64,000 nt of DNA, taken from sequence record MN988561.1, one strand, 5' to 3'. Of this stretch, positions 2,052 to 57,137 are shown one piece after another. Position numbers and translations under genes: made by a program. Within the stretch, counting starts at the first letter, position 1. Every line of letters begins with the position of its first letter. The notes under the pieces were generated by a model. It was given only the letters and a program-made list of their open reading frames with translations, was not told where the DNA came from and made no database searches.

Positions 2052-2485
2052 ACTGGTCAGATCTTACAATTGCATTTCAGTACATCGTTAGTAATGTACC
2101 AGAACCTATGGGCAAGTCTAGTGATGGGATTCTGAAAGTCGAGTTTGGTAATGAGAGTCTGTGGGATAAAGAATTCCACATCAAACCTCTAGTCTCAGTT
2201 GAACTCGGAGGTTATCAAATAGGTACCTGGAATAGACATACAGTTATCGGACCATTCGATACTGAAGAAGATGCTATGGAAGGTACACGTAAGAAGATTC
2301 TTGAAGCATTCGATATTGTTAATCAAGAAATTTTCGAACATCTTCGACCTGAGTACTATCATCTTGAGGATGATCAGATCCCTCGATGGAACAATGAAGT
2401 TAGTAGATTCTCGGACTCAGAGAAGTCTAAGATGATGAGTCTTGAGAACGAATTTCTCTCTGTATTAAGCGATCGGAAGGCTTGA
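2048..2485 (+). CDS. Hypothetical protein
   Basis: 145 aa ORF with ATGA overlap. Confidence 0.7.
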   Translation: MNWSDLTIAFQYIVSNVPEPMGKSSDGILKVEFGNESLWDKEFHIKPLVSVELGGYQIGTWNRHTVIGPFDTEEDAMEGTRKKILEAFDIVNQEIFEHLRPEYYHLEDDQIPRWNNEVSRFSDSEKSKMMSLENEFLSVLSDRKA

Positions 2486-2495
2486 TAGCCTTCCT
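2469..2495 (+). promoter_or_regulatory. Putative phage promoter, class 1 (copy 1)
   Basis: GCGAT-N13-AGCCTTCCT. Confidence 0.7.
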
Positions 2496-2524
2496 TTCTT
2501 GATAAGAATAATATAGAGATTATT

Positions 2525-2797
2525 ATGAATAATACTATATCTACCCAATTGATTTGGGAAGAAGTAGATGAGGACCAGTGGTTTCTTTACTATAATCCTA
2601 CTGATAATTCTTCTAAGATTTTCATCGGAGAAGTGTACTGGTCTATTTCAGGATCTATTAGATGGATTAATAAATTGACAGACTGGAGAGATTCATCATC
2701 TTCAATCGAACAAGCACGAGATGACTTGTTCACTAGTTGTCTGGAAGAACTTAGTAGACTCGATAAGTCATATCAAAGGATAGAGTATGCCAACTGA
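2525..2797 (+). CDS. Hypothetical protein
   Basis: 90 aa ORF downstream of motif copy 1. Confidence 0.7.
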   Translation: MNNTISTQLIWEEVDEDQWFLYYNPTDNSSKIFIGEVYWSISGSIRWINKLTDWRDSSSSIEQARDDLFTSCLEELSRLDKSYQRIEYAN

Positions 2798-3215
2798 AAT
2801 CGTAGATGGTAAAATTGATGGGATCGATATAAACGATCCTCATTTTACTCTAAAACATATGTATCGAATCATTCCAGAGAGTGAAGCTGGACAAGGACAT
2901 GTTGATCGTATGCTTGACTTCTTCGTTGAGCATCCATATATTCCGGAGCAAGATACATATACCAAATATGAATTTGCTAATATTCTAACGAAACATGATC
3001 ATCGACTAGAGATGACAGGATTTTACTTCAATCCTGATGAAGAATTTAGTAACCTGGAAGTCGAGGATGACGAAAAGGCTATTCTACAACCTTATGCACT
3101 GATGCTTGCATGCCTACAAGGTAATGCATTCCCTGACCTTATCGAACAATACATGAAGGAAGCTAAATGGTTTCTCATGTCTAACGGTTGGTGGGATAAA
3201 GTACGTCAGGCATAA
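2787..3215 (+). CDS. Hypothetical protein
   Basis: 142 aa ORF, overlapping start. Confidence 0.7.
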   Translation: MPTEIVDGKIDGIDINDPHFTLKHMYRIIPESEAGQGHVDRMLDFFVEHPYIPEQDTYTKYEFANILTKHDHRLEMTGFYFNPDEEFSNLEVEDDEKAILQPYALMLACLQGNAFPDLIEQYMKEAKWFLMSNGWWDKVRQA

Positions 3216-3230
3216 TCTGAAAGGATATGC

Positions 3231-3476
3231 ATGAGTATAGAATACTTTATCAAACTAGGGATCAATCTTACATTATCATTATCCTGTATAGGTATGCTGA
3301 TAATTATGAGGCAGATTCTCCATAAGGAGAGTTTTACTCAGAAAAGATTGATCATGTTGTTCACGAGTATACTGATTGTAGTCATTCTGGCCATGATCTG
3401 GACTGACTACTCATTTGTCGTCTATCGTTACTTGCATCCAGCTGAGAAATCAGACTTGATCCTTAACGGTAATTAA
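3231..3476 (+). CDS. Small membrane protein (2 predicted TM helices)
   Basis: Two hydrophobic stretches. Confidence 0.7.
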   Translation: MSIEYFIKLGINLTLSLSCIGMLIIMRQILHKESFTQKRLIMLFTSILIVVILAMIWTDYSFVVYRYLHPAEKSDLILNGN

Positions 3477-3490
3477 TCACTCTAGAATCG

Positions 3491-3517
3491 GCGAACCTAA
3501 CGTCGGATAGCCTTCCT
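3491..3517 (+). promoter_or_regulatory. Putative phage promoter, class 1 (copy 2)
   Basis: GCGAA-N13-AGCCTTCCT. Confidence 0.75.
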
Positions 3518-3554
3518 TAATGTCAGACGTTCGATCGTCTTTCAGGTTGCCTTA

Positions 3555-3595
3555 GCCAGTATCTTAGTCTTCGGATTGAGATACTGGCTCTTTTT
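3555..3595 (+). terminator. Rho-independent terminator
   Basis: GCCAGTATCTTAGTC-TTCG-GATTGAGATACTGGC (15 bp with 2 G-U pairs, cUUCGg loop) followed by TCTTTTT. Confidence 0.85.
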
Positions 3596-3623
3596 CTGTT
3601 TCTACTGAAATTTGTGGTGTGAC

Positions 3624-3809
3624 ATGAGTATTAAAGATCGTGAGATGAAGTCTCTATGCAATCAACTCAAAACTCTGTTTTGTGGAGGTAAAGTGGATGA
3701 CCTCACTCGATTAATAATTTCAAATGAACTAGCGATCTTCAATCGGAAGTATAAGAGTAATCTCACAATGGACATTTCCAATGATGGAATATTGTTCGAG
3801 GAACGTTAA
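3624..3809 (+). CDS. Hypothetical protein
   Basis: ATG at 3624; coupled by TAATG to the next gene. Confidence 0.6.
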   Translation: MSIKDREMKSLCNQLKTLFCGGKVDDLTRLIISNELAIFNRKYKSNLTMDISNDGILFEER

Positions 3810-6073
3810 TGTCAATTGTAGTCGTCAATGGTCAAGAATTTGAGACAGATAGTCTTGATTTTAGTGACAAGTCTAAAAGATTAAATTGGCATACGGATGA
3901 AGGTAAATTTATTCGTTCATTGAAGCAAGATATCTATCTAACTGCTAAGATGGTTGAATATTGTACCGATCATGTAGATAATTTGGCCACTGATTACAAG
4001 TCACCGGACGGTCTCGGGTTCAAGTATGTCAAAGCCTCATTTATGGCTGAGCTACGTGATAAATCTAATAAAACACCTGAGAATTTCGTTAATAACCTAT
4101 TTATCCCGTATTATACTGTAATGATCAATGCGATCAAGGCACTATCTCAAGTTGTTGATACGGACGAGAAAGAGGATACATGGGTATGGACGTACAATGA
4201 GCAAGGTAAGATCATTTATGATTATTCACCTGAAGCTCTTCAACGTCGTAAAACATTCCTAGAGAATTTTGACAAGTCGATCCTACCTCTAGACTACAAG
4301 AAGTTAGAGGAGATTTTTACTAAGCCTGAATACACGACAGAGACTAACAAACGAGTAGTCTGTTGGTCGTGTGGTTCTTATAAGACGACACTGATTCGTC
4401 AGTTTATCGTAAAGAACTGGCTTAAAGGCATATTGTATGCTTGTACAACGATCGAAGAAGTCGACATGTTGTCATACGATATCGCGTGCTTCATAGGTGA
4501 GCAGAATGTATTCAAGCTCCACTCTCAGATCGATGAGAGTATCTATGATCAGTACCATAAGGACCCAGAGTTCCTATTCTCCAAGCCTGTCGTCGTGACG
4601 ACGCATTACAGACTTATGATGGACCCTCCGACTATCTTCATCTCTCAGATTAATAAACCTGGAGGTCAAGATCCTCGTCGACAGTACGTCCTCATCGATG
4701 AGAAACCACAATTCTTTGATTCGATCAGTATTTCAAGTGATCAGATTAAGAATGTGATGAGTCTTGTTACTAGCATCGATGATCCTGATGCTCCAGATGA
4801 AGCATTTAGATCATTCAGAAATTCAGTGATGAATTCTACAGGACTTCAGAAGTCATTAAATCACAATTCTGTTGAGATCTTCAGTAAATCGATTGTTAAT
4901 AAGTCTACTCAGATGGTAACAACTTATACGACTCCGTCTGGTTCGATTAAAGAAGTACCTAATATTCATATGTTGAGAGCAGAATTCTCAATTTATATGA
5001 TTGTTAAGCAGATTCAGAAGAAATTGAAGCAGGATCCTCAGTATTATCCTAAGACTAAGGATAATGTGTTCTATTATAATCTTGGTGATCTTGGATTCAA
5101 GAATCTGATTATCTTTGATGGCACAGGTGATCTTATTCTAGGTTCTGAGGACCCTGACTGGAAGAATCCAGATTGGATGATTGTTAAGACTCCAGAGACT
5201 AGCTTTAGATTCAAGGGATCATTCAATGAGATCGAATGTGATATTCGCAGACGTCTCGTTGGTAATCAACTTGAGCATTACTCTCGTGAGTTTGATAAGA
5301 TTATTCAGTATTTGATTGATCTCGCAGATAAGCATGAGAAGATCTTTGTAGTGTCATGGAAGGATCTTAAGAATGGAGAAGAAGATATATCTCCGAGTCC
5401 TATCCTGGAACATAATGTACTAGCTAAGCTAACAGATCAAAGGATTGTTCAAGCGACTGATGATCTAAATTCTTACATTAAGTATCGTATTCCTGTATCC
5501 ATTCGTCACAAGTTCGACTTCACATATTACATGTCAGGTAGAACGAGAGGTACGAATCAATTCATGAATTGTGATGCTGCTGTTCTATTAGGTAGTTTTC
5601 ATATTCCTAATAGTGTGATTGCTCGTATGAATGAGCAAAACAATGCTAAGATGACCAACAAGATGCACTCTATGGCAGAAGTCGTTCAAGCTATCTATCG
5701 TACTAGAGCTCGAAAGATGAAGCCTGTCGATGTTTACTATACTTCTGATTGGAGTAAAGAATTTATCGTAGATGTGATGAAATATATCAATGCTACAGTT
5801 TCTGATGAGTTTAATGTTGACCTACAGACTTCAATGAGGTTATTCTCAATGACGTATGGAGTAAATATTACTCCGACGACAACTAAGTTGATAAAACTGT
5901 TATCTTCTAGATATACAGATTTGACTTCAGGTAAAAGTGTTGAATTTAGAATACCTGATGGTGAAGATAGTAGAGAATACAAATCTGCTATCAAGAACTT
6001 ATTGAATAAGGTGGATGAATTACGATTTGAAGATAAGAAGTATTCTCGATTCTTCAGCGTAGTACCCGTCTAA
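3809..6073 (+). CDS. SF2 helicase-like protein (754 aa) with degenerate Walker A
   Basis: WSCGSYKT (motif I), VVVTTH, VLIDEKP (II), IIFDGTG (III), RGTNQF (V), QAIYRTRAR (VI). Confidence 0.65.
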   Translation: MSIVVVNGQEFETDSLDFSDKSKRLNWHTDEGKFIRSLKQDIYLTAKMVEYCTDHVDNLATDYKSPDGLGFKYVKASFMAELRDKSNKTPENFVNNLFIPYYTVMINAIKALSQVVDTDEKEDTWVWTYNEQGKIIYDYSPEALQRRKTFLENFDKSILPLDYKKLEEIFTKPEYTTETNKRVVCWSCGSYKTTLIRQFIVKNWLKGILYACTTIEEVDMLSYDIACFIGEQNVFKLHSQIDESIYDQYHKDPEFLFSKPVVVTTHYRLMMDPPTIFISQINKPGGQDPRRQYVLIDEKPQFFDSISISSDQIKNVMSLVTSIDDPDAPDEAFRSFRNSVMNSTGLQKSLNHNSVEIFSKSIVNKSTQMVTTYTTPSGSIKEVPNIHMLRAEFSIYMIVKQIQKKLKQDPQYYPKTKDNVFYYNLGDLGFKNLIIFDGTGDLILGSEDPDWKNPDWMIVKTPETSFRFKGSFNEIECDIRRRLVGNQLEHYSREFDKIIQYLIDLADKHEKIFVVSWKDLKNGEEDISPSPILEHNVLAKLTDQRIVQATDDLNSYIKYRIPVSIRHKFDFTYYMSGRTRGTNQFMNCDAAVLLGSFHIPNSVIARMNEQNNAKMTNKMHSMAEVVQAIYRTRARKMKPVDVYYTSDWSKEFIVDVMKYINATVSDEFNVDLQTSMRLFSMTYGVNITPTTTKLIKLLSSRYTDLTSGKSVEFRIPDGEDSREYKSAIKNLLNKVDELRFEDKKYSRFFSVVPV

Positions 6074-6083
6074 GACCCTTCCC
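6057..6083 (+). promoter_or_regulatory. Putative phage promoter, class 1 (degenerate copy)
   Basis: GCGTA-N13-ACCCTTCCC. Confidence 0.45.
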
Positions 6084-6158
6084 GCTTAAGGAGGCTGAAT
6101 ATCCCGGTTTGTACTGGACCGGGGAATTGACCTTTCTTAAGTAACTTATAATAAGATA

Positions 6159-9354: not shown

Positions 9355-9596
9355 CAATAAATAGTAATGTATTGCATGCAATTAATGATTTCAAGAACTA
9401 TATCATTGAACTTGATAATGGTGTACCGTATCGTCGAGCAGTTCAGATAAGAGATCAAGCTAGTATCTGCAATGATCTGATGAACTATACGAGTGCCAGT
9501 ATGTGGGATTCTAATCCTCCTGAGTGGCAGGAATTAGATTCACTAGTGACAATGGTATTTCAAAAGACAAATAAATTGATCTACAAGAGCGAATGA
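9351..9596 (+). CDS. Hypothetical protein
   Basis: 81 aa coupled ORF. Confidence 0.6.
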   Translation: MTINSNVLHAINDFKNYIIELDNGVPYRRAVQIRDQASICNDLMNYTSASMWDSNPPEWQELDSLVTMVFQKTNKLIYKSE

Positions 9597-9615
9597 GAGG
9601 TCGATTAACCTTCCT
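9589..9615 (+). promoter_or_regulatory. Putative phage promoter, class 1
   Basis: GCGAA-N13-AACCTTCCT. Confidence 0.7.
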
Positions 9616-9648
9616 CTTTACAACAACGAATCCAGGTATTTTTAGATA

Positions 9649-10602
9649 ATGATTATTTTAGGAGCAGGTCTGGCTGGTACATTAGCTGGACTAATTAATC
9701 CTCAGGCTTTGATCCTAGAAGGATCAAAGTCCGTTGACGATATGAGAATGCATAAAGCTGTTCTCAGATTCAGAGACGATAAGATCGGTAAATTGACTGG
9801 CGTACCTTTTACTAAGATCAAGGTCCGTAAGTCAATTCATATCGACAATAAAGACTATTTGGAATGCACTCCTCGACTAGCGAATATGTATTCGAAGAAG
9901 GTCACTGAAGGATATTCAGATCGTTCGATCTGGAATCTAGAGACTAGCGATCGATTCATTGCTCCTACGAATTTCCATGAGATTCTTATGAGCTATTGTG
10001 GTGATCGTATCAAGTTCAATCATAGTGTCACTGCAATCAAATCAGATAAGATTTATGCAAAAGATGATGTAACGATTGAACGAGATGATACTCCTATCGT
10101 TAGTACACTACCAATGCCTCTTCTAGGTCGTGTCATTGGTAAGCCATTCGACATCAAGTTCGAATCTAAGCAGATCAAGGTCTCTCGCTACAAAGTGAAA
10201 GGTGCCAAGATCAATCAAACGATCTATTTCCCAGGAACTGAGACACTTGCATATCGTGCATCGATGGTTCAAGATATCTTGATTATCGAGAAGATTGAAG
10301 ACGATAGTGGAGCGATTAACGATCGAGTTGATGATGCGTATATTATCAATGCGTTCGGTCTAGATACTCTTGATGTTGAATTCATTGAAGATGCATCCCA
10401 GCTTGGTAAGATCACAGCAATTGATGAGAAGGTTCGTAAGAATTTCATCTTCAATGTGACACGTGATCTGAATGTATACTCATTAGGTAAATTTGCATTG
10501 TGGAAAAATCACACGTTATTGGATGACGTTTATGATGACATATTCAAGATTAAAACTTATATGTCAGGTACTGATTACGATAGAATGAAATCAAGTTTTG
10601 GT
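9649..10602 (+). CDS. FAD/NAD(P)-binding oxidoreductase; 3' end runs into an N-gap
   Basis: N-terminal IILGAGLAG dinucleotide-binding motif and C-terminal VYSLGKFALW flavin-binding-type motif. Confidence 0.75.
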
Positions 10603-10622
10603 NNNNNNNNNNNNNNNNNNNA

Positions 10623-10955
10623 CAGTCTATTATAAAGAAGATTGCGAATTCTAATCGAGGGAAGCCTCGTACTGAAGAATTTAAATTAAAAGTATCTCTT
10701 CAGCATAAAGGTAAAACTGTTTCAGAAGAGTCTCGTAAGAAAATGAGTGATGCTCATAAAGCGAGAAGATCTAATCCTAATTATGTCGACAAAAGAGTAT
10801 GGTCTGAAGAGTCTAAACGTAGTTCAGGTAAACATCGTCGAGGATCTTTATGGATTACTAATCCAGATCTTAAGATAAATAAATTCATTAAGACAGATCT
10901 TGAAACTTATCTATCAAATGGATGGGTCAAAGGTCGAGGTAGTTACAATGCATAG
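10623..10955 (+). CDS. Homing endonuclease C-terminal part (NUMOD3-type repeats); 5' end lost in gap
   Basis: Frame is open from the gap: NRGKPRTEEFKLKVS, HKGKTVSEESRKKMSDAHK, WITN...GWVKGR. Confidence 0.7.
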   Translation, partial: QSIIKKIANSNRGKPRTEEFKLKVSLQHKGKTVSEESRKKMSDAHKARRSNPNYVDKRVWSEESKRSSGKHRRGSLWITNPDLKINKFIKTDLETYLSNGWVKGRGSYNA

Positions 10956-12181: not shown

Positions 12182-12476
12182 CCAAGTTTACTCTCGAGTA
12201 AGATGTACAAAGTACATTATTCGATATGTTACAGAAGGATATCCTTCGAGTATTCATCTTGACTATACTGTAGTTCCAGTCGAAGGTGATCTCGTTCATG
12301 CTGAGATTCATACGTCTCACTCTTTCGATATTAAAGAATTCGTAGTAGGTGCGAGTACATATAATATGTCTCAAATTTTCGATACTCATGGAGAAGCTGA
12401 GATTGCAGCTAAGAAGAGAATTCGTAACGACTATGAAAAGACGAAATCTCTATTAGAACGCTTCAATCTGGCATAA
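12174..12476 (+). CDS. Hypothetical protein
   Basis: 100 aa coupled ORF. Confidence 0.65.
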   Translation: MYDQVYSRVRCTKYIIRYVTEGYPSSIHLDYTVVPVEGDLVHAEIHTSHSFDIKEFVVGASTYNMSQIFDTHGEAEIAAKKRIRNDYEKTKSLLERFNLA

Positions 12477-12484
12477 GCCTTCCT
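12458..12484 (+). promoter_or_regulatory. Putative phage promoter, class 1
   Basis: ACGCT-N13-AGCCTTCCT. Confidence 0.65.
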
Positions 12485-12514
12485 AATTGTCCAGCACCAA
12501 ATAGGTAATTTATA

Positions 12515-15230: not shown

Positions 15231-15257
15231 CCGTACAGGAGTAAGGATAGCCTTCTC
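15231..15257 (+). promoter_or_regulatory. Putative phage promoter, class 1
   Basis: CCGTA-N13-AGCCTTCTC, lying within a hairpin. Confidence 0.55.
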
Positions 15258-15285
15258 TCTTGTACGGCAATTCTTAGGCATGTAA

Positions 15286-16008
15286 ATGACAACGAATACT
15301 AGTGAGAAATCTCTGAAGAATGACATTGCTGTCAGTTCTCCAAATAAGAAGAGACTGACATTCGCTATCGACTTTGATGGCGTTATTTATCCATACAAGA
15401 ATGGATATAACAATGGGCTCATGTCTGAAGATCCCATTCCAGGTGCACGAGATGCACTGGTTCACCTTCGCAATGAAGGTCATAAGATCGTAATCAACAC
15501 CTGTCGAGGTGCTGTAGAAGATCTTAAATCTTATTTCAATCTCCATGACATTCCATTCGATGAAATCAATGAGAACTCAGATAACTATGAGGACTCAAAT
15601 AAGGGTAAACCTTTTGCTGATTATTACATCGATGATCGAGCTATTCGATTCGAAGGCGATTGGTCCCTCACATTAGATGAGGTACGTCGCAAGAGATTCC
15701 CATGGTTCATTAAGTCTGAGAATAAGATTGCAGCAGATCTTATGAATGACTCAGCAGAATTATATCGACAGCGTAATCTTGTTTATGGCGATTCATATCG
15801 ACGTCACGGTGAGATTATGGCTAAACTATTTCCTAATGGTGTAACCTTGAAGACAGCTGAAGATTTTAATCGATTCGGCATTCTTAACATGAAGATATCT
15901 AAGGTTACTAGATATTGTCAGAATTTTGAGAAGGGTGGTCATCTTGACTCAGTGATCGATGATGGTGTTTATACCTTCATGCTCGCTGAGCTTGATATGT
16001 CCAAGTAG
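15286..16008 (+). CDS. HAD phosphatase fused to a DUF6378/nucleotide-modification-associated helical domain
   Basis: N-terminal AIDFDGVI, INTCR, KPFADYYIDDRA (HAD motifs I-IV). C-terminal RNLVYGDSY...KISKVTRY...HLDSVIDDGVY. Confidence 0.65.
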   Translation: MTTNTSEKSLKNDIAVSSPNKKRLTFAIDFDGVIYPYKNGYNNGLMSEDPIPGARDALVHLRNEGHKIVINTCRGAVEDLKSYFNLHDIPFDEINENSDNYEDSNKGKPFADYYIDDRAIRFEGDWSLTLDEVRRKRFPWFIKSENKIAADLMNDSAELYRQRNLVYGDSYRRHGEIMAKLFPNGVTLKTAEDFNRFGILNMKISKVTRYCQNFEKGGHLDSVIDDGVYTFMLAELDMSK

Positions 16009-20259: not shown

Positions 20260-20286
20260 ACGAATTTGAGGTCCTAAAGCCTTCCT
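20260..20286 (+). promoter_or_regulatory. Putative phage promoter, class 1
   Basis: ACGAA-N13-AGCCTTCCT. Confidence 0.75.
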
Positions 20287-20316
20287 TGTCAGGTCGGTTT
20301 TAGGACCTTTTATTTT
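20269..20316 (+). terminator. Rho-independent terminator overlapping the promoter motif
   Basis: AGGTCCTAAAGCC...GGTTTTAGGACCT followed by TTTATTTT. Confidence 0.65.
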
Positions 20317-24383: not shown

Positions 24384-24410
24384 CCTCTAGAGAGGTTAAT
24401 AAGCCTTCCT
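24384..24410 (+). promoter_or_regulatory. Putative phage promoter, class 1 (upstream block degenerate)
   Basis: CCTCT-N13-AGCCTTCCT; preceded by the palindrome TAACCTCT-AG-AGAGGTTA. Confidence 0.55.
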
Positions 24411-24471
24411 TATTGAGGAGGATTTCTTAGATATCCCTATCAATTAGAAATTTTAAGTTGACGAGAATTAA

Positions 24472-27474: not shown

Positions 27475-27501
27475 GCGAAGTTAGGTGCGATAAACCTTCC
27501 T
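27475..27501 (+). promoter_or_regulatory. Putative phage promoter, class 1
   Basis: GCGAA-N13-AACCTTCCT. Confidence 0.7.
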
Positions 27502-27555
27502 TCTTCGTTGAGCGGATTCGAGTTATTGAATTCGTTCATTTAATGTGAGAGAAAT

Positions 27556-28689
27556 ATGCAGAAGATTAGTTTTAATATTGATAAACTCCAGAGTATCATT
27601 GGTGCTGCGAAAGCTTCGGCAAACAGTGGTCAAAGACGTGAGTTCACAAATACTGCGTTCCTTCCAGATGGTACGCATAAAATGCGATTCTTCCTAGGTC
27701 CAGATAATGAACTGTTCCGTGATGTGAAGATGTATCAATTCAAGGGTAAGAAGACTCTGTCTCCTCAAGTCTTGAATCGTGAGAATGAGAAGAATCCTGA
27801 ATGGCCTAAGATTGTACAGGCTATGAAGCCTGAATGGAAAGAACAAGAGGTTACGAAGATTCCTCTTGAAGATACCATTGACAAGGCTGCTAAGGAAATT
27901 AATAACTGGAAGTCTGGTCTATCTCTGAAGGGTCGTACCATGGTTTATGCCAAGGTATATGCGACTAACAAGGAAGATCAGTACTGGAAGCCAGATAATG
28001 TGTATGCCGTCATTGGTAAGAAGAAGCTGAAGGATGCTATTCTTGCTATGCTTGAATCTCTTGCAGCAGATTCGCCTGACTACATTATCTCGATGCTTAA
28101 TCCTTCGCTATCTGGTGGTATGGTAACGGTTAACGTTACTGGTGGTACTCAAGGTGCAGTTACGATTACTCCGATCCCTGGATCAACCAAGGATCCGATC
28201 CTTACTCTCGACGAGGCTGGTAAGGGTCCAGAATGGTGGAGACCTCTTGATGAAGTCTTCATTGGTAAAGATTTTAATCTCAAGGCATGGGAAGAAGCTG
28301 AAGCAGAAGCTCAGAAGATTCTTGCTGAATGGCGTGAGAAGAAGGCTAATGGCACTGCTCCATCAGGTGATGGAGATGGTGACGGAGAAGGCAGCTCTGA
28401 TGATAAGGAGGGCGAGAGGTCTAGTACCTCTCAGTCCTCTCAATCTGAATCTCAGCAGTCATCTGAAGTAAAGGATTCTCCTAAAGAGGATCCTAAGCCT
28501 GAAGTGAAGACAGAGGTCAAGTCTGAACCTGACCTAGCTTCTAATCAGCGCAAGTGTCATACAGGTAGAGTAGTGACTCTACCTGATATCGCTATCCAGG
28601 ATAATTGCTGGAAGGGATATGACGCTGGTAATATCAAGTGCATCTCATGTCCTGTGAACATTGAGTGCATGTCTGAGCAGGCTTTTTAA
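27556..28689 (+). CDS. Probable ssDNA-binding protein (gp32-like) with acidic linker and Cys-rich tail
   Basis: LPDGTHKMRFFLGP N-terminal strand pattern, long D/E/S/G linker, location among replication genes. Confidence 0.6.
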   Translation: MQKISFNIDKLQSIIGAAKASANSGQRREFTNTAFLPDGTHKMRFFLGPDNELFRDVKMYQFKGKKTLSPQVLNRENEKNPEWPKIVQAMKPEWKEQEVTKIPLEDTIDKAAKEINNWKSGLSLKGRTMVYAKVYATNKEDQYWKPDNVYAVIGKKKLKDAILAMLESLAADSPDYIISMLNPSLSGGMVTVNVTGGTQGAVTITPIPGSTKDPILTLDEAGKGPEWWRPLDEVFIGKDFNLKAWEEAEAEAQKILAEWREKKANGTAPSGDGDGDGEGSSDDKEGERSSTSQSSQSESQQSSEVKDSPKEDPKPEVKTEVKSEPDLASNQRKCHTGRVVTLPDIAIQDNCWKGYDAGNIKCISCPVNIECMSEQAF

Positions 28690-28695: not shown

Positions 28696-28733
28696 TGGGT
28701 GGGATTCAGAAATGGATTCCACCCAATTCTTTT
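28696..28733 (+). terminator. Rho-independent terminator
   Basis: TGGGTGGGATTC-AGAAAT-GGATTCCACCCA followed by ATTCTTTT. Confidence 0.75.
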
Positions 28734-32975: not shown

Positions 32976-33608
32976 ATGGATATTGCATTATTTGGTCTAA
33001 TTGACTATACACTCTTCAGCTGGGTACTTTTCGCAGTGCTCATCGGATTTGTAGGTATCATTGAAGAGAATGAACTACCTATTCCAGCATTCATTGTATT
33101 TATTGTAGGTCTTACCGCACTTCAGTACTATACAGATCTGAAAGCTTGGACATATGTCTACGAGAATCCTTGGTACTTCCTCTTGTATGTAGTTATCTAC
33201 ATCATAGCTGGTATCGTATGGTCTCATGCTAAATGGGTACTTTATCTTCAAGAGATCAAGCGTTATCATCCTACGAGCATCAAAGAAGCAGAGGCTCACG
33301 CACTCGTAGTTGAAAAACGTAATGAAGAGTATCGTAGTACTCATCCTGAGTACAAATGTCAGTCTGTTGATGTTAATAAAGAAGCGATCGAATATACTAC
33401 TAAGAGATTCCGATTGAAGTCTCTTCCTCCGAAGGCTTCTGAGAAGAAGGTAGCTATCACATCATGGTTGATGTATTGGCCTATCTCTGCACTATGGACA
33501 GTTGTTGATAATTTCGTACTTAATCTATTCAACAATTTGTTCGAACTGATTCGTGCTAGCTATCAGCAGGTATCGGATCGTATATTCGCTGATTTTACGA
33601 CCAAGTGA
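32976..33608 (+). CDS. Membrane protein
   Basis: Three to four hydrophobic segments. Confidence 0.75.
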   Translation: MDIALFGLIDYTLFSWVLFAVLIGFVGIIEENELPIPAFIVFIVGLTALQYYTDLKAWTYVYENPWYFLLYVVIYIIAGIVWSHAKWVLYLQEIKRYHPTSIKEAEAHALVVEKRNEEYRSTHPEYKCQSVDVNKEAIEYTTKRFRLKSLPPKASEKKVAITSWLMYWPISALWTVVDNFVLNLFNNLFELIRASYQQVSDRIFADFTTK

Positions 33609-33626
33609 GGCTCGATTAGCCTTCCT
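33600..33626 (+). promoter_or_regulatory. Putative phage promoter, class 1
   Basis: ACCAA-N13-AGCCTTCCT. Confidence 0.65.
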
Positions 33627-33655
33627 CTTTATCGAGAGAACGAAGTGAGATATTT

Positions 33656-35630: not shown

Positions 35631-36097
35631 TGAAGAAGAATGTATTAGTAGGATTAGATCATAGGATCCTTACAGGTCTAGATAGTCTTGTCCTACTCTT
35701 ATGCACCAGACTACAAATCAAGAAAATCCATCTTCAGAGACTCCTGGTTTGTATTTATTGTGTCTTATTGCATAAAATTGGATTTTCTGTTATAGGCATC
35801 CTTGTTCTACAAGGTTTACAAGAATTGTCCCTGTTAAATATGGGGACGAAATCATACAACAATTACATCGAGGGAACTCGATTTGAGCCATTCAATATTT
35901 ATGTCAGGNNNNNNNNNNNNNNNNNNTCCTTCCTATTCTGTATATATTATACTGCATATTCATTCGCTCTTCATGAGATCACTACAATTAATGTACTTCA
36001 GAAGATTATTCTGGAAGTGTACGTGTATAGTGTATTCTGTCGAGACTACAACGGTACGACGCAAGTAGAGTACTGGGACGAGACGAAGTTCGCCTGA
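35630..36097 (+). CDS. Hypothetical protein spanning an N-gap
   Basis: TAATG coupling; frame continuity across the gap at 35909-35927 cannot be verified. Confidence 0.35.
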   Translation: MKKNVLVGLDHRILTGLDSLVLLLCTRLQIKKIHLQRLLVCIYCVLLHKIGFSVIGILVLQGLQELSLLNMGTKSYNNYIEGTRFEPFNIYVRXXXXXXSFLFCIYYTAYSFALHEITTINVLQKIILEVYVYSVFCRDYNGTTQVEYWDETKFA

Positions 36098-36109
36098 ATA
36101 AGCCTTCTC
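36083..36109 (+). promoter_or_regulatory. Putative phage promoter, class 1
   Basis: ACGAA-N13-AGCCTTCTC. Confidence 0.7.
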
Positions 36110-36174
36110 TTCTTAGAGAATCAAGAATTTTCTACTTAGATATAAATTTAATTTAACATAACATTAGGTATAAA

Positions 36175-36630
36175 ATGCCTCTACTATTCAGAGAAAATAT
36201 CTGGAGAGTCGATCTTCAACTTAATCGCAATATTCTATTCCTCTTTGGTGACAATGAGGCTAGATATGGCTTAGGTGGTCAAGCTAGAGAGTGCAGAGGA
36301 GAGCCTAACGCTGTAGGCGTCAGAACTAAGAAGAAACCTTCTCGAGATAATGACGCTTACTGGTCTGATAATAAGTACGATAAATATGTTGAAATGATTG
36401 ATGAAGATTTTAAACGTGCATTCGATCATATCTTAGCAGGAGGTACAGTGGTCTGTCCTATGGCTAAGTTAGGATCTGGTATGTCTGAGCTCCCTACAAG
36501 AGCACCTAAACTTTATCGATATATTGAATATAAAATTAGCGAACTCGGTCGTCTGGGCAACATGATCCGAGAAGTCGATACTGAGATTAGTGATAGATAC
36601 CTTGCTCAGAAGGGTATCTTGAAAACATAA
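36175..36630 (+). CDS. Conserved phage protein, possibly macrodomain-like
   Basis: LFLFGDNEARYGLGGQA...NAVGVRTK...LGSG; Gly-rich loop reminiscent of macro folds. Confidence 0.5.
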   Translation: MPLLFRENIWRVDLQLNRNILFLFGDNEARYGLGGQARECRGEPNAVGVRTKKKPSRDNDAYWSDNKYDKYVEMIDEDFKRAFDHILAGGTVVCPMAKLGSGMSELPTRAPKLYRYIEYKISELGRLGNMIREVDTEISDRYLAQKGILKT

Positions 36631-41570: not shown

Positions 41571-41613
41571 GCGTAATTCTTCTAAATAAACGGAAGAATT
41601 ACGCTTTATTTTT
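41571..41613 (+). terminator. Rho-independent terminator
   Basis: GCGTAATTCTTC...GAAGAATTACGC followed by TTTATTTTT. Confidence 0.8.
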
Positions 41614-41624: not shown

Positions 41625-41651
41625 GCGAAGGAGCGTCCCTTAAGCCTTCCT
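41625..41651 (+). promoter_or_regulatory. Putative phage promoter, class 1
   Basis: GCGAA-N13-AGCCTTCCT, directly after a terminator. Confidence 0.8.
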
Positions 41652-41751
41652 CTCTCGTAAGACGTTAATTCTAGAAATTCCAATACGGAGTATGTAATGT
41701 CTTCTATTAAAAACTCCGATCCTAAAACCATCTCCTGAAAGGAAAATTCTC

Positions 41752-45658: not shown

Positions 45659-45909
45659 TTCCATCAAAATGGACGGTTTATATCGTAGAGTGTAGAGATA
45701 AATCCTTGTATACAGGAATCACTACTGATATAAACCGTCGTCTACTCCAGCACAATAATGGTACTGGAGCCAAGTATACAAGAAGCAGAAGACCTGTTAG
45801 TATCGTTTATACCGAGAAATTACCAGATAGGTCTTCTGCTCTCAAACGTGAATACGCTATTAAGCAACTATCTCGTAAGGAGAAGTTGCAATTAGTAAAT
45901 TTTAGATAG
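45649..45909 (+). CDS. GIY-YIG nuclease (UPF0213)
   Basis: VYIVECRDKSLYTGITTDINRRLLQHN.GTGAKYTR..RPV. Confidence 0.92.
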   Translation: MEIVPSKWTVYIVECRDKSLYTGITTDINRRLLQHNNGTGAKYTRSRRPVSIVYTEKLPDRSSALKREYAIKQLSRKEKLQLVNFR

Positions 45910-45939
45910 GTTCACTTAACGTCTCCAAGGGATTCTTCT
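45906..45939 (+). promoter_or_regulatory. Class-2 bipartite motif ATAGGTTCACTT-N9-AAGGGATTCTTCT, copy B
   Basis: Both blocks identical to 447-480, with the same spacer length. Confidence 0.5.
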
Positions 45940-45977
45940 TTAGGAAGGGACCTTGGAGATTCTTAGAGGTAATTTAA

Positions 45978-46214
45978 ATGGGCACTAGTGCTCCTGATAT
46001 TACAATTAGTAATCCCAATATTGATCATACTTACGATACGAGTAATCTTCCATTTCTCAGGAAGACTCCTCCTCACGTCCTTGGAGAATCTAAGGACGAT
46101 TTTCTAAGTAGAATGTCCCTTGCTACTCATGACCGAGTGAACAACTTAGAGTTCACGATTGTGAGTCGTAGAGATTGGGACCATCTGCTCTACTTAGCAA
46201 GTAGATCCATCTAA
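45978..46214 (+). CDS. Hypothetical protein
   Basis: GAGGT RBS; 78 aa. Confidence 0.6.
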   Translation: MGTSAPDITISNPNIDHTYDTSNLPFLRKTPPHVLGESKDDFLSRMSLATHDRVNNLEFTIVSRRDWDHLLYLASRSI

Positions 46215-46644: not shown

Positions 46645-46671
46645 GCGAAGTAGAGGCCGGAGAGCCTTCCT
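46645..46671 (+). promoter_or_regulatory. Putative phage promoter, class 1
   Basis: GCGAA-N13-AGCCTTCCT. Confidence 0.8.
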
Positions 46672-46684
46672 TGTTAGACGTCAA

Positions 46685-50686: not shown

Positions 50687-51589
50687 ATGCTTAAACGTAA
50701 TGTTTTGTTGACAGGTTCAGCAGGATACATTGGATGCGTAGTCGGAGATCGACTACGCAAGTCCAACAATACTGCATTAACTACCTTAGATCGAAAATAT
50801 CATATTACTGAAGGTGCTCATCACATCCAAGGTGATGTGAAGAATCTTATCAATTCAGAACAAGATGTGCTCGTTCATCTCGCAGCATTGATCTCAGTAC
50901 CTGAGTCTCATAGTCACGCTGAAGAGTACTATGATAATAATTGTTCTCAATTTCATGAAATGCTGAATCTGAATCAAAATCACTTTGGTCATCTGATTTA
51001 TGCATCTTCATTCTCAATTTATGATGAGAATCTAGAGATCTATCCTAAATCCGTTTATGCTTCTACTAAATTAGAAGGTGAATGGATTGTAAAGAGATGG
51101 GCTCAGACGATGAATCAAGATTATTCGATTCTAAGATTTGCAAATCCGATTGGTGTTAGTCAATCACTCCACTCTCATATTGCAGATCGTATACAATCGA
51201 GTTACGCTAATGTTATGTGGAGACTTGCTCGATGCAAATTACTAGGCGAGATGTTTTATATTCATGACCTGCCTGGTATGACACGTGACTTTTATCCTGT
51301 TGAATGGATTGGATATGTTATCGACTGGATTGCTAAGAATGGTCCCGTAGGTACTGTAAATCTAGGTAGCGGTAAGCCTGTATCAGTTATGAATCTTCTT
51401 CAGCATATCTGTGAGAAGTATAATATCAGTTACAAGTATGTTCTACCACCTGAAGGTACTGCTCTAGGTATTACCAAGAAGGTTGATGTATTCAAAGAAG
51501 GGATTCCTGATTTTGATACCTACGATCCAGTTGCATATTGTGAGAAGTCGTTTTTAGATTATCTATCGTTGATTCAGAACGCGAATTAA
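50687..51589 (+). CDS. NAD-dependent nucleotide-sugar epimerase/dehydratase (GalE-like SDR)
   Basis: TGSAGYIG, HLAALISV.ES, YASS, YASTK. Confidence 0.9.
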   Translation: MLKRNVLLTGSAGYIGCVVGDRLRKSNNTALTTLDRKYHITEGAHHIQGDVKNLINSEQDVLVHLAALISVPESHSHAEEYYDNNCSQFHEMLNLNQNHFGHLIYASSFSIYDENLEIYPKSVYASTKLEGEWIVKRWAQTMNQDYSILRFANPIGVSQSLHSHIADRIQSSYANVMWRLARCKLLGEMFYIHDLPGMTRDFYPVEWIGYVIDWIAKNGPVGTVNLGSGKPVSVMNLLQHICEKYNISYKYVLPPEGTALGITKKVDVFKEGIPDFDTYDPVAYCEKSFLDYLSLIQNAN

Positions 51590-51607
51590 CGCTAGATTAG
51601 CCTTCCC
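51581..51607 (+). promoter_or_regulatory. Putative phage promoter, class 1
   Basis: GCGAA-N13-AGCCTTCCC. Confidence 0.75.
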
Positions 51608-51617
51608 TTCTCGTAGA

Positions 51618-54455: not shown

Positions 54456-54463
54456 GAGGTAAT

Positions 54464-55429: not shown

Positions 55430-55433
55430 TCTT

Positions 55434-55473
55434 AAGGTCTACTAGAAGAGATTCTAGTAGACCTTTTCTTTTT
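55434..55473 (+). terminator. Rho-independent terminator
   Basis: Perfect 14-bp stem AAGGTCTACTAGAA-GAGA-TTCTAGTAGACCTT followed by TTCTTTTT. Confidence 0.9.
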
Positions 55474-55482
55474 GAGGATAAA

Positions 55483-55842
55483 ATGCTCAAATTAGATAGA
55501 AGTGTCAAAGAGTCTGAGTGTCTACACTACGAATTTGATATTAATGGTGGTTATAGCATTACTTTAAAAATCGTCTTTGATGATACTGAAGAGAATGCGA
55601 TTCACTTTGATTCTCATGATCACGATGTTCAGATTAATGGATTTAAATATTATATTTTAGATTCAGATACATACAGTAATGGGACATCAATGAGGATTAT
55701 GAAGATATCGTCTACAAATGATGATAGTGCTAAATACCTGATGTCTTATATTGAAGGTTTCATCATCAAAAATAAATTAGGAAACTCTAGCGGACTTCGA
55801 TATAGATCTTATATACGATCAGATCAACAATCACTCAAGTGA
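55483..55842 (+). CDS. Hypothetical protein
   Basis: GAGGA RBS; 119 aa. Confidence 0.65.
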   Translation: MLKLDRSVKESECLHYEFDINGGYSITLKIVFDDTEENAIHFDSHDHDVQINGFKYYILDSDTYSNGTSMRIMKISSTNDDSAKYLMSYIEGFIIKNKLGNSSGLRYRSYIRSDQQSLK

Positions 55843-55851
55843 GGACAGAAG

Positions 55852-56580
55852 ATGGCTCGTTGCTATGTAGGATGTAGTGGATTCTCGTATAATCATTGGA
55901 ATGATAACTTCTACCCTGCAGGAGTAGAGAGGTTCTCATTTTATACGAGTCAATTTGATTCATTAGAGATCAATAGTTCATTCTACAGATTACCTAGTGC
56001 AAGCGTATTCCACTCATGGTATCGACGATCACCTGCTCATATGACATTCACTGTGAAAGCTCCTCAGACGATTACTCATCGTAAGAAGCTAAAGGATGCT
56101 GACGATATAGTTCAGAGATTCTATGAGAATACTCTTGAGCTAGGTGACAAGATGAAATGTGTCTTATGGCAGTTACCTCCTAATTTCTCCATAAGAATGT
56201 ATGATCGTGTCAAGAAATTCTGTGACAGTATTCATAACAGATTTCCTAATTCAGCATTCGAGTTCAGACATCCTTCATGGATGCAGACTCACGTACCTCA
56301 ACTTCTATCTACATACGACTTTGAGTTTGTACGTACAGATTTTCATAAATACGTAAATGTATCCATGGATGGGTCCTCGTCTAAATTCCAGTACTACCGA
56401 TTACATGGACCTACAGGTCAGTATCACGGTCGTTACACTGATGAGTTTCTTGAGAATATAGCTGATCGTCTAACAGATGAATCATTCGTATTCTTCGACA
56501 ATGATGGTGGAGGTCAAGCTCCTAAGGATGCTAAAAGATTAATCAAAATTCTAGAGACAAGAAATGAAATTAAATTATAG
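55852..56580 (+). CDS. DUF72 (YecE) family protein
   Basis: YVGCSGFSYNHW, LEINSSFYRLP, FTVKAP..ITH, LWQLPP, AFEFRH.SW, YYRLHG, FFDND. Confidence 0.92.
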   Translation: MARCYVGCSGFSYNHWNDNFYPAGVERFSFYTSQFDSLEINSSFYRLPSASVFHSWYRRSPAHMTFTVKAPQTITHRKKLKDADDIVQRFYENTLELGDKMKCVLWQLPPNFSIRMYDRVKKFCDSIHNRFPNSAFEFRHPSWMQTHVPQLLSTYDFEFVRTDFHKYVNVSMDGSSSKFQYYRLHGPTGQYHGRYTDEFLENIADRLTDESFVFFDNDGGGQAPKDAKRLIKILETRNEIKL

Positions 56581-57109
56581 AGCATATGCAGGAATTGGAT
56601 CAAGAAGTACTCCTCCACATATTCTTGAGTTTATGAGAATTCTAGCATTCAAGCTTGGGTCTCAAGAAGATCCATGGACTGGTCGGTCAGGTCACGCTGA
56701 TGGTGCAGATGATGCATTCGAAGTAGGTATGGAACAAGCTAATGGACCTATGGAGATCTTTCTACCGTGGAGAGGTATGGCTAACAGTCGATGTAAGAGT
56801 GATTCTCCGTATTACGAAATCAAAACAATTGCTTACGATCTAGCTTCTAGGATTCACCCTAAATGGTACGGATTAACTCATGGAGCTAAGAAACTTCATG
56901 CTAGGAATACTTATCAAGTCTTAGGTTACGATCATCAGACTTGGAGTAAAGCTGTTGTATGCTATACTTCTGACGGTCTACCGATTGGAGGTACTCGTAC
57001 AGCGATTAAGATAGCAGAGATGCACGGTATTCCGGTTATCAATCTAGGTGATCCTGAGTGTAAATACGAAACTCCTGATCAAATTGTGGAATATTTAAAC
57101 TCTCTATAG
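56564..57109 (+). CDS. SLOG/DprA-like Rossmann-fold protein
   Basis: YAGIGSR.TP, RSGHADGAD, HARN..QVLG, GGTRTA. Confidence 0.8.
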   Translation: MKLNYRAYAGIGSRSTPPHILEFMRILAFKLGSQEDPWTGRSGHADGADDAFEVGMEQANGPMEIFLPWRGMANSRCKSDSPYYEIKTIAYDLASRIHPKWYGLTHGAKKLHARNTYQVLGYDHQTWSKAVVCYTSDGLPIGGTRTAIKIAEMHGIPVINLGDPECKYETPDQIVEYLNSL

Positions 57110-57110
57110 A

Positions 57111-57137
57111 GCGAATCTAGCGTGGGAAAGCCTTCCT
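57111..57137 (+). promoter_or_regulatory. Putative phage promoter, class 1
   Basis: GCGAA-N13-AGCCTTCCT. Confidence 0.8.

What the first reader, a model, noticed from the sequence alone, without database searches (positions are those of the whole stretch)
2469..57137. Bipartite promoter-like code RCGAA-N13-AGCCTTCCT repeated 15 times at operon heads
Seen: 15 copies, all on the + strand and all at or overlapping gene junctions, with an invariant 13-nt spacer. Upstream block / downstream block (start of upstream block): GCGAT/AGCCTTCCT 2469; GCGAA/AGCCTTCCT 3491; GCGTA/ACCCTTCCC 6057; GCGAA/AACCTTCCT 9589; ACGCT/AGCCTTCCT 12458; CCGTA/AGCCTTCTC 15231; ACGAA/AGCCTTCCT 20260; CCTCT/AGCCTTCCT 24384; GCGAA/AACCTTCCT 27475; ACCAA/AGCCTTCCT 33600; ACGAA/AGCCTTCTC 36083; GCGAA/AGCCTTCCT 41625; GCGAA/AGCCTTCCT 46645; GCGAA/AGCCTTCCC 51581; GCGAA/AGCCTTCCT 57111. 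Nine carry exact AGCCTTCCT, against roughly 0.2 expected by chance per strand if GC is about 40%. Nine carry RCGAA at exactly the same offset. Downstream genes are mostly replication and nucleotide functions (helicases, thyX, dut/nrd, SSB, exonucleases, Mre11-Rad50, topo II, GT/ParM). Established: this does not match sigma70, sigma54, sigma28, T4 late (TATAAATA) or T4 MotA-box consensus. Inference: a phage-specific, probably middle-class promoter read by a phage sigma factor or RNAP.
Basis: partly seen in the sequence, partly recalled or inferred. Interest (0 to 1): 0.85.

Follow-up and report, generated by a model that had tools for sequence, protein, structure and literature searches.

The report
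Phage-specific promoter motif in a rhizobiophage
A 31-base two-part DNA signal sits just upstream of gene clusters and tRNA genes in a 200-kb Rhizobium phage; it is most likely a promoter read by machinery the phage supplies itself, and no such signal has been described for this little-studied phage group.

Summary
The window is Rhizobium phage RHph_TM61 (MN988561.1, 62001-126000). All 15 cores lie in the 5.6% of the window that is non-coding (P about 2e-19). The complete relative TM30 has about 30 copies. Each follows the gene orientation of its block, one heads the long plus-strand block, and several sit directly before tRNA genes.

The motif is not the phage's terminator type, matches no Rfam family, has no conserved hairpin, and resembles no sigma-70-type consensus. 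A promoter is the best reading, but no transcription-start data exist.

- **Second class:** a related motif, GGTTCA-N13-AGGGATTCTTCTT, has the same architecture and dominates the left 62 kb.
- **Distant relatives:** E. coli phage IME392 and Vibrio phage Va2 each carry their own sense-strand intergenic motif.
- **Possible reader:** all three phages encode a bacterial-type RNA polymerase beta' (in TM30 intact, with no beta found among the proteins scanned). In TM30, two paralogous helical proteins are encoded just upstream of it.

The reading factor is unidentified.

The parts
2469..2499 (+). Class A site GCGAT-N13-AGCCTTCCT. The core is also the 3' arm of a perfect 8-bp hairpin followed by TTTCTT. 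Next gene starts at 2525.
   Evidence: (32.6 bits)
3491..3521 (+). Class A site GCGAA-N13-AGCCTTCCT. A strong terminator (3554-3595) follows 37 nt later. Next annotated gene starts at 3809.
   Evidence: (35.2 bits)
6057..6087 (+). Class A variant GCGTA-N13-ACCCTTCCC, followed by a hairpin and T-run at 6093-6138. This site is absent from TM30.
   Evidence: (27.8 bits)
9589..9619 (+). Class A site GCGAA-N13-AACCTTCCT. Next gene starts at 9649.
   Evidence: (38.6 bits)
12458..12488 (+). Class A site with a degenerate upstream block (ACGCT), before thyX (12515). In TM30 the flanks differ but the core and about 20 nt downstream are kept.
   Evidence: (23.7 bits)
15231..15261 (+). Class A variant CCGTA-N13-AGCCTTCTC. 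Next gene starts at 15286, leading the dUTPase and ribonucleotide reductase cluster.
   Evidence: (23.3 bits)
20260..20290 (+). Class A site ACGAA-N13-AGCCTTCCT, lying inside a terminator hairpin (20269-20316) that ends the upstream operon.
   Evidence: (33.7 bits)
24384..24414 (+). Class A site with a degenerate upstream block (CCTCT), before the DnaB-like helicase gene (24472).
   Evidence: (25.2 bits)
27475..27505 (+). Class A site GCGAA-N13-AACCTTCCT, before a 377-aa protein (27556) that is conserved in IME392 and Va2.
   Evidence: (36.9 bits)
33600..33630 (+). Class A site ACCAA-N13-AGCCTTCCT, before the 5'-3' exonuclease gene (33656).
   Evidence: (34.0 bits)
36083..36113 (+). Class A variant ACGAA-N13-AGCCTTCTC. 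Next gene starts at 36175.
   Evidence: (28.3 bits)
41625..41655 (+). Class A site GCGAA-N13-AGCCTTCCT, 12 nt after the terminator at 41571-41613. Next gene starts at 41752.
   Evidence: (35.3 bits)
46645..46675 (+). Class A site GCGAA-N13-AGCCTTCCT, the best-scoring copy, heading small genes and then the topoisomerase II genes.
   Evidence: (40.3 bits)
51581..51611 (+). Class A site GCGAA-N13-AGCCTTCCC. It has one extra C relative to TM30, which reads AGCCTTCCT.
   Evidence: (33.8 bits)
57111..57141 (+). Class A site GCGAA-N13-AGCCTTCCT. Homology with TM30 ends about 10 nt after it, where a different homing-endonuclease cassette begins. An assembly gap lies 48 nt downstream.
   Evidence: (38.9 bits)
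446..489 (+). Class B site ATAGGTTCACTT-N10-AGGGATTCTTCTCTGAAGGG. This is a related second motif class with the same block-N13-block architecture. Next gene starts at 522.
   Evidence: (63 bits)
45905..45950 (+). Class B site, directly after a terminator-like hairpin (45858-45903). Next gene starts at 45978.
   Evidence: (57 bits)
41571..41613 (+). Canonical intrinsic terminator (13-bp stem, T-run) immediately upstream of site 41625. It is an example of the phage's real terminator type, which is distinct from the motif.

Best explanation
**Claim.** The motif is a class of phage-specific promoters in Rhizobium phage RHph_TM61 and its near-identical relatives (Cuauhnahuacvirus).

**Inferred geometry.** A -35-like block (a)GCGAA and a long -10-region block AGCCTTCCTyNTT sit 13 nt apart. 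Transcription would start about 4-7 nt after the last conserved T, at offset about 34-37.

**Inferred role.** This class drives the replication, nucleotide-metabolism and tRNA part of the genome (61-150 kb). A sister class, GGTTCA-N13-AGGGATTCTTCTT, drives mainly the left 62 kb.

**Inferred reader.** Neither class looks like a host sigma-70 promoter, so a specificity factor supplied by the phage is inferred. The most plausible machinery is host core polymerase rebuilt around the phage's own beta' subunit, together with unidentified factors. The two paralogous helical proteins encoded next to the beta' gene are candidates.

**Shown versus inferred.** Placement, orientation, spacing and distinctness from terminators are shown.
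For: **Statistics.** The core occurs 9 times against 0.27 expected. The 15 sites score 23-40 bits with nothing comparable elsewhere or on the other strand.

**Placement.** All 15 cores lie in the 5.6% non-coding sequence, at least 29 nt before the next start codon.

**Genome-wide in TM30.**
- About 30 copies, all on the + strand within the + gene block.
- The one strong - strand copy (160755) lies in the - block, upstream of a - strand gene.
- One copy (207355) lies in the divergent region at the head of the + block, with no + strand gene upstream of it.

**tRNA genes.** The tRNA-Ser gene begins at offset 36 of site 128600. The tRNA-Asn gene begins at offset 44 of site 137522. A translational role is therefore excluded, and any start point must lie at or before offset 36.

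**Information profile.** Conservation stops at offset about 31, followed by purine enrichment at offsets 31 and 34-36.

**Terminators are a different element.** The real terminators have 13-16-bp stems with T-runs and sit in other gaps. One directly precedes site 41625.

**Other negatives.** Sigma-70-type matches number 62 against 59.5 expected. There is no Rfam match.

**Sister class.** Class B has identical block-N13-block geometry and 9 of 13 identical bases in the downstream block. It has 17 copies, all sense-strand, and the first lies just before gene 1. Class-B-like motifs are kept at the orthologous spot in two diverged relatives.

**Distant phages.** IME392 has 25 sense-strand copies of CCGCTCTTT-N10-AAAGGCTGTTAA. 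Va2 has about 30 copies of GAACCy-N5-AACCTTGCT, which matches AACCTTCCT at 8 of 9 bases.

**Candidate machinery.** The phage beta' is intact (E 4e-152 to bacterial beta', NADFDGD present). A 218-aa protein and a 243-aa paralogue are encoded just upstream of it. The linkage between this family and beta' is kept in Va2 and in a metagenomic contig.
Against: - No transcription-start data exist for this phage or for any close relative.
- No sigma, T7-like polymerase or beta subunit was found. Pfam was run on about 90 proteins and PHROGs on 10 selected ones.
- The protein family next to beta' has no significant match to sigma or to any solved structure.
- The core is C/T-rich rather than A/T-rich, which is unusual for a melting element.
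- Two sites (3491, 6057) are followed within 10-40 nt by a terminator, and two (2469, 20260) lie inside one. A signal acting on RNA is therefore not excluded.
- The spacer is weakly but significantly complementary to the core: the mean best stem is 3.8 bp against 2.9 bp for shuffled spacers, 0 of 2000 shuffles reaching it.
- The upstream block is degenerate in 6 of the 15 sites.
- All available class A copies come from genomes at least 98.6% identical, so conservation under divergence could not be tested for this class.
Confidence: 0.65

Rival explanations
1. The motif acts in RNA. It would be a recognition site in long polycistronic transcripts for an endoribonuclease, a stabilising factor or an antitermination factor (as with T7 RNase III sites or lambda nut sites), rather than a place where transcription starts.
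For: - The strict sense-strand and intergenic placement fits equally well.
- The spacer is weakly complementary to the core, counting G-T pairs.
- In four sites the motif lies inside or just before a terminator hairpin.
Against: - No conserved secondary structure: only 7 of 34 sites have a stem of 5 bp or more.
- No Rfam match.
- Two sequence blocks at a rigid 13-nt distance, without pairing between them, is the signature of protein-DNA recognition.
- One copy heads the + block, where no upstream + strand gene exists.
- Conservation stops abruptly at about offset 31.
- The sister class B precedes the very first gene.
Confidence: 0.15
2. The motif is a promoter, but it is read by the unmodified host polymerase with one of the host's own alternative sigma factors. 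No phage factor would be involved.
For: - The geometry (a 5-nt block, about 17 nt, then a pyrimidine-rich -10 region) suits sigma-70-family holoenzymes.
- No phage sigma was detected.
- From my own knowledge, the pattern 'GAA-N15-CC..' is loosely reminiscent of heat-shock sigma promoters.
Against: - It does not match the housekeeping, RpoN, RpoH or extracytoplasmic-function (ECF) sigma consensus of alphaproteobacteria as I recall them. This was not tested against a host genome.
- Relatives infecting E. coli and Vibrio have equally dominant motifs that fit no E. coli-type consensus.
- The Va2 core resembles this one although the hosts differ.
- The phage carries its own beta'.
Confidence: 0.12
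3. The motif is the 3' half of an intrinsic terminator or another DNA hairpin element, or it is a DNA site for recombination, homing or replication rather than for transcription.
For: - Site 2469 is a perfect 8-bp hairpin followed by TTTCTT, and site 20260 lies in a 10-bp hairpin followed by a T-run.
- Module boundaries between phages coincide with sites 12458 and 57111.
Against: - Thirteen of 15 sites have no terminator-grade hairpin.
- The phage's genuine terminators are long perfect stems in other gaps.
- A copy sits at the head of the + block, where there is no upstream + strand gene to terminate.
- Sites for recombination or replication would not need to be co-oriented with genes and strictly intergenic.
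- Module exchange at shared promoters is expected and is known from T4-type phages (my own knowledge).
Confidence: 0.04

Closest known systems
Bacillus phage SPO1 middle promoters read by the phage sigma gp28 (AGGAGA-N17/18-TTTNTTT, from my own knowledge)
   Same: - Bipartite, with a non-host consensus and a T-rich -10 region.
- Repeated ahead of replication-type gene clusters.
- Exists alongside other promoter classes in one large lytic phage.
   Different: - The sequence is unrelated.
- No gp28-like or any other sigma domain was found here.
- Here two classes share one geometry.
T4 middle promoters (MotA box plus sigma-70 -10, with AsiA) and T4 late promoters (TATAAATA with gp55/gp33)
   Same: Phage-directed reprogramming of the host core polymerase at a conserved upstream box, marking a temporal class.
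   Different: - There is no TAnnnT-type -10, no TATAAATA and no MotA box.
- The spacing differs.
- No MotA, AsiA or gp55 homologue is annotated, and none appeared among the proteins I scanned.
Promoters of phage-encoded multisubunit polymerases (phiKZ-type and AR9 non-virion polymerases)
   Same: Phages with unusual DNA (uracil in AR9) that carry beta/beta'-like genes and short phage-specific promoters unrelated to sigma-70.
   Different: - Those phages encode full sets of split, highly diverged beta and beta' pieces.
- This phage has one intact, bacterial-type beta' (E 4e-152) and no detectable beta.
- Their promoters are short and lie around the start site, not 31-nt bipartite.
T7-type single-subunit polymerase promoters
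   Same: A highly conserved element of about 23-31 nt repeated some 15-30 times, all co-oriented, at gene-cluster heads.
   Different: - Those are one continuous block extending past +1, whereas here two blocks are separated by a variable spacer.
- No T7-like polymerase gene is annotated in TM30.
Promoter-early stem-loop cassettes of T4-type phages (my own knowledge)
   Same: - Promoters paired with stem-loops at the borders of exchangeable gene modules.
- Here module junctions fall at sites 12458 and 57111, and hairpins follow class B sites.
   Different: Those promoters are ordinary sigma-70 early promoters; these are not.

Membership tests
Sigma-70-family bipartite promoter | Two conserved blocks at a fixed spacing compatible with -35 and -10 contacts | tested here: met
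   GCGAA and AGCCTTCCTyNTT are separated by exactly 13 nt in all 34 distinct sites. If transcription starts at offset about 36, the blocks fall at about -36..-32 and -18..-6.
Sigma-70-family bipartite promoter | Match to a known consensus (TTGACA/TATAAT or the known alternative-sigma consensuses) | tested here: not met
   Generic sigma-70 scan gives 62 matches against 59.5 expected, and none lies at the sites. By eye the blocks fit no consensus I know.
Sigma-70-family bipartite promoter | A cognate sigma factor encoded by the phage or the host | tested here: inconclusive
   No Sigma70_r2 or r4 hit in about 90 phage proteins. The family next to beta' is helical with two domains but has no significant match to sigma. 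Host sigma factors were not examined.
Sigma-70-family bipartite promoter | Primary transcripts start a fixed 5-9 nt after the -10 element | not testable with these tools
   No RNA data. Indirect evidence only: tRNA-Ser begins at offset 36, and conservation ends at about offset 31.
Intrinsic (Rho-independent) terminator | G+C-rich hairpin of at least 5-6 bp immediately followed by a T-run | tested here: not met
   Only sites 2469 and 20260 qualify. Genuine terminators are long stems in other gaps.
Structured RNA element (Rfam family or a conserved hairpin) | Conserved secondary structure, or a match to a curated covariance model | tested here: not met
   No Rfam hit at gathering score in the window. 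The best spacer-core stem is 3-4 bp in most sites and 5 bp or more in 7 of 34.
T7-like single-subunit polymerase promoter | A single-subunit polymerase gene in the genome and a continuous consensus running through +1 | tested here: not met
   No such gene in the TM30 annotation. The spacer is variable.
Promoters of phage multisubunit polymerases (phiKZ/AR9 type) | The phage encodes both beta-like and beta'-like subunits | tested here: not met
   beta' is present and intact. No Rpb2/beta domain was found in any large hypothetical protein scanned.

The most novel reading that the evidence does not exclude
Class A and class B motifs are the promoters of a hybrid polymerase. A lone phage-encoded, bacterial-type beta' would replace the host beta' in the host core. 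The two paralogous helical proteins encoded next to it (218 and 243 aa in TM30) would be a new kind of specificity factor, one per promoter class. This would be an adaptation for transcribing the thymine-hypermodified DNA expected in this phage clade. The arrangement would be shared with E. coli phage IME392, Vibrio phage Va2 and their relatives.
Probability: 0.15. Interest if true: 0.85.

Novelty: new member of a known kind. Interest (0 to 1): 0.5.

Why it matters
Nothing is published on how transcription works in this group of large phages. The group includes the YerA41, SP-15, RP13 and IME392 relatives, in which thymine-hypermodified DNA is proven or suspected. The only promoters on record for the group are generic sigma-70 software predictions.

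A clean 31-nt consensus with about 30 copies per genome, plus a sister class, gives three things:
- a transcription-unit map of the phage;
- a handle for finding the factor that reads the motifs;
- portable, phage-dependent expression signals for Rhizobium.

Tried and rejected
1. **Exact-pattern scans** of IMG/VR and of metagenome contigs returned only single chance matches. No locus held a second good copy.
2. **Relatives of the helicase in IMG/VR:** none found.
3. **Rfam:** no match.
4. **Hunt for a sigma factor:**
   - Pfam on about 90 hypothetical proteins and PHROGs on 10 selected ones, including the genes between capsid and sheath where YerA41 is reported to carry a 'sigma factor', gave nothing.
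   - ORF 58776-59366, conserved in IME392, has relatives carrying the T4 endonuclease V domain, so it is not a regulator.
   - The protein family next to beta' folds as two helical domains (pLDDT 79.5) but has no significant match in the PDB.
5. **Nuclease upstream of site 20260:** I tried to reach a diverged relative through it. Its best hit is an unrelated 56% G+C phage with no motif.
6. **Promoter features in the YerA41 record** are BPROM predictions with no shared phage consensus.
7. **Conservation test against TM30:** the genomes are too similar, and two sites sit at module junctions.
8. **Anti-Shine-Dalgarno or translational reading** of CCTTCCT: rejected because copies precede tRNA genes.


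Full report
**Identity of the window.** The window is identical to Rhizobium phage RHph_TM61 (MN988561.1) positions 62001-126000. This is a myovirus of about 203 kb (Kleczkowskaviridae, Cuauhnahuacvirus), isolated on R. etli. Seven other isolates (ten records, two of them duplicated in RefSeq) are 98.6-99.7% identical. I fetched TM30 (NC_070966.1, 207,623 bp, complete) in full for comparison. All genes in the window are on the + strand. In TM30 the + block runs from 1 to about 159.6 kb, and the structural genes form a - block from 159.6 to 206.9 kb.

**Assembly gaps first.** I mapped the flanks of each run of N onto TM30.
- 10603-10621 replaces 322 bp of TM30. The 328-aa ORF read through this gap is therefore not reliable.
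- 35909-35926 replaces 6 bp and is in frame either way.
- 57189-57231: the right flank has no TM30 match, because a different homing-endonuclease cassette follows.

No gap touches a motif copy.

- AGCCTTCCT occurs 9 times, all on the + strand, against 0.27 expected.
- All 15 listed sites are as described.
- A weight matrix gives them 23-40 bits. The next + strand hit scores 11.5 bits and no - strand hit reaches 9 bits.
- The window is 94.4% coding, yet all 15 cores are non-coding (P = 1.7e-19). They occupy 15 of the 34 gaps of 20 nt or more.
- The spacer is 13 nt in every copy.
- With 34 distinct sites from TM61 and TM30 the consensus is aGCGAA-N3-ARGS-N6-AGCCTTCCTyNTTR. Conservation ends at about offset 31, and purines are enriched at offsets 31 and 34-36.

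**Genome-wide behaviour.**
- TM30 has 28 exact cores, every one on the coding strand of its block.
- It has about 30 full sites.
- The one strong - strand site (160755) lies in the - block, upstream of a - strand gene.
- One site (207355) lies in the 0.8-kb divergent region that heads the + block.
- Five sites lie in the tRNA region. tRNA-Ser starts at offset 36 of site 128600, and tRNA-Asn starts at offset 44 of site 137522. This excludes a translational role for the pyrimidine core, which resembles an anti-Shine-Dalgarno sequence. It also means any start point must lie within about 10 nt after CCTTCCT.
- AGCCTTCC is the most over-represented 8-mer in both the 0-61 kb and the 61-160 kb parts, and it is not among the over-represented 8-mers of the structural block.

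**Not a terminator, not a known RNA.**
- The phage's real terminators are perfect 13-16-bp stems with T-runs, at 28696, 31206, 32927, 44014 and 55434. They occupy gaps that lack the motif. One (41571) sits 12 nt before site 41625.
- Terminator-like sites are enriched in the region I scanned (21 against 9.1 expected). Sigma-70-type matches are not (62 against 59.5).
- Rfam finds nothing.
- The spacer tends to complement the core: the mean best stem is 3.8 bp against 2.9 bp for shuffled spacers, with 0 of 2000 shuffles reaching it. However, only 7 of 34 sites reach 5 bp. I treat this as a sequence preference or a minor feature, not as a defining structure.
- Complications remain. Sites 2469 and 20260 lie inside terminator hairpins. 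Sites 3491 and 6057 are followed within 10-40 nt by one. This could mean overlapping terminator-promoter pairs, short RNAs or attenuation.

**A sister motif.** The same genome carries 17 sense-strand copies of ATAGGTKCASTTA-N9-RAGGGATTCTTCyTTGAAGGG.
- Fourteen lie in the first 62.3 kb, and the first is right before gene 1.
- Two are in the window, at 446-489 and 45905-45950.
- Written as GGTTCA-N13-AGGGATTCTTCTT, it has the same block-N13-block geometry as GCGAA-N13-AGCCTTCCTTCTT, and 9 of 13 bases of the downstream block are identical.
- It often follows a terminator and is followed by a variable G+C-rich hairpin.

Two classes with one geometry, partitioned along the genome, is what a switch between two specificity factors on one polymerase would produce.

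**Relatives.** There are no close relatives outside the eight isolates in IMG/VR or in the metagenome pattern scans.
- The phage belongs to a loose clade whose DNA polymerase resembles that of YerA41. That clade is the one discussed for thymine-hypermodified DNA. PMC12686479 lists RHph_TM30 together with IME392, EP_H11, RP13 and SP-15.
- The nearest outgroup, E. coli phage IME392 (tail sheath 41% identical, helicase 34%), has 25 sense-strand intergenic copies of its own motif, CCGCTCTTT-N10-AAAGGCTGTTAA.
- Vibrio phage Va2 has about 30 copies of GAACCy-N5-AACCTTGCT before genes. Its 9-mer differs from the AACCTTCCT variant of the present motif at one base. That is suggestive, but could be chance at roughly the 0.03-0.05 level.
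- Neither motif fits a host consensus.
- Class-B-like motifs are kept at the orthologous position in two metagenomic relatives, at 63% and 44% protein identity.

**Who reads it?** Outside the window, TM30 encodes an intact bacterial-type beta'. It is 1127 aa, has Rpb1 domains 1-5, scores E 4e-152 against bacterial beta' structures, and keeps NADFDGD and the N-terminal zinc motif.
- No beta, sigma or T7-like polymerase was found.
- IME392 and Va2 also carry a beta' homologue (split into pieces in IME392) next to the polymerase A gene or nearby.
- Just upstream of beta' in TM30 lie a 218-aa protein and a 243-aa paralogue (hhalign probability 96%).
- The 218-aa family has 35 members in the representative library.
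- It is also encoded upstream of beta' in Va2.
- In one metagenomic contig it is directly followed by the beta' gene.
- It models as two helical domains (pLDDT 79.5).
- It matches uncharacterised proteins of the same clade in BFVD.
- It has no significant match to sigma or to anything else in the PDB.

These proteins are leads, not findings.

**Verdict.** The repeat is real and highly non-random. A phage-specific promoter class is the best explanation (about 0.65). The main rival is a signal acting on RNA (about 0.15). The consensus is new and undescribed: text searches for the motif and for the genus found nothing relevant. The GenBank promoters of the related YerA41 are only BPROM output. 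As a kind of thing it is familiar, namely a new member of the class of phage-specific promoters. What lifts it above routine is the sister class with the same geometry, together with its occurrence in a clade that carries a lone bacterial-type beta'.

Noticed in passing
TM30 (NC_070966.1) 155259-158642, locus L006 5259-8642; outside the window: An intact, bacterial-type RNA polymerase beta' gene (1127 aa, NADFDGD present, E 4e-152 to bacterial beta'), with no beta partner detected. Homologues at about 29% identity occur in Vibrio phage Va2, E. coli phages IME392 and EP_H11, and others.
   Followed up: partly
TM30 153180-153911 and 154354-155010 (L006 3180-3911, 4354-5010): Two paralogous helical proteins (243 and 218 aa; hhalign probability 96%) are encoded just upstream of beta'. 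The family is linked to beta' in Va2 and in a metagenomic contig (L243). It has no Pfam, PDB or sigma match.
   Followed up: partly
window 446-489 and 45905-45950; 17 copies in TM30: A second repeated sense-strand intergenic motif, ATAGGTKCASTTA-N9-RAGGGATTCTTCyTTGAAGGG. It is concentrated in the first 62 kb and has the same geometry as the reported motif.
   Followed up: partly
window 3491-3600: The motif copy at 3491 is followed after 37 nt by a very strong terminator (3554-3595, -24.6 kcal/mol). The next annotated gene is 210 nt further on. This could be a small RNA of about 70 nt, or an attenuator.
   Followed up: no
window 10603-10621: The 19-N gap stands for 322 bp in TM30. That stretch holds the end of a polysaccharide deacetylase gene and the start of a homing-endonuclease gene. 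The annotated 328-aa ORF 9649-10635 is therefore an artefact of reading through the gap.
   Followed up: yes
window 57141-57872, compared with TM30 118546-119469: Different homing-endonuclease genes are inserted in TM61 and TM30, starting about 10 nt after the same motif copy. Site 12458 likewise marks a junction between non-homologous modules.
   Followed up: partly
E. coli phage IME392 (MH719082.1; L114-L116) and Vibrio phage Va2 (MW073017.1; L238, L239, L112, L240): Each has its own dominant sense-strand intergenic motif: CCGCTCTTT-N10-AAAGGCTGTTAA (25 copies) and GAACCy-N5-AACCTTGCT (about 30 copies). As far as I could find, neither has been described.
   Followed up: partly
window 58776-59366: A 196-aa 'hypothetical' protein conserved in IME392. 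It hits PHROG 624 (DNA binding protein), and several of its relatives carry PF03013. It is therefore probably a T4 endonuclease V-like pyrimidine-dimer glycosylase.
   Followed up: partly
window 27556-28689: A 377-aa protein of unknown function directly after motif copy 27475. It is conserved in IME392 and Va2 (E 1e-20 to 1e-28) next to helicase and exonuclease genes, and has no Pfam or PHROG match.
   Followed up: no
TM30 207560-207623 and 1-20 (head of the + block): A run of about 60 nt made almost only of A and T, in short repeats, lies between motif copy 207355 and the class B copy before gene 1. It may be an origin or another control region.
   Followed up: no
Logan contigs ERR1198915_4122 (L241) and SRR5896279_7814 (L243): Fragments of undescribed relatives of this phage (63% and 44% protein identity). 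They would allow a true conservation test if more of their genomes were assembled.
   Followed up: partly
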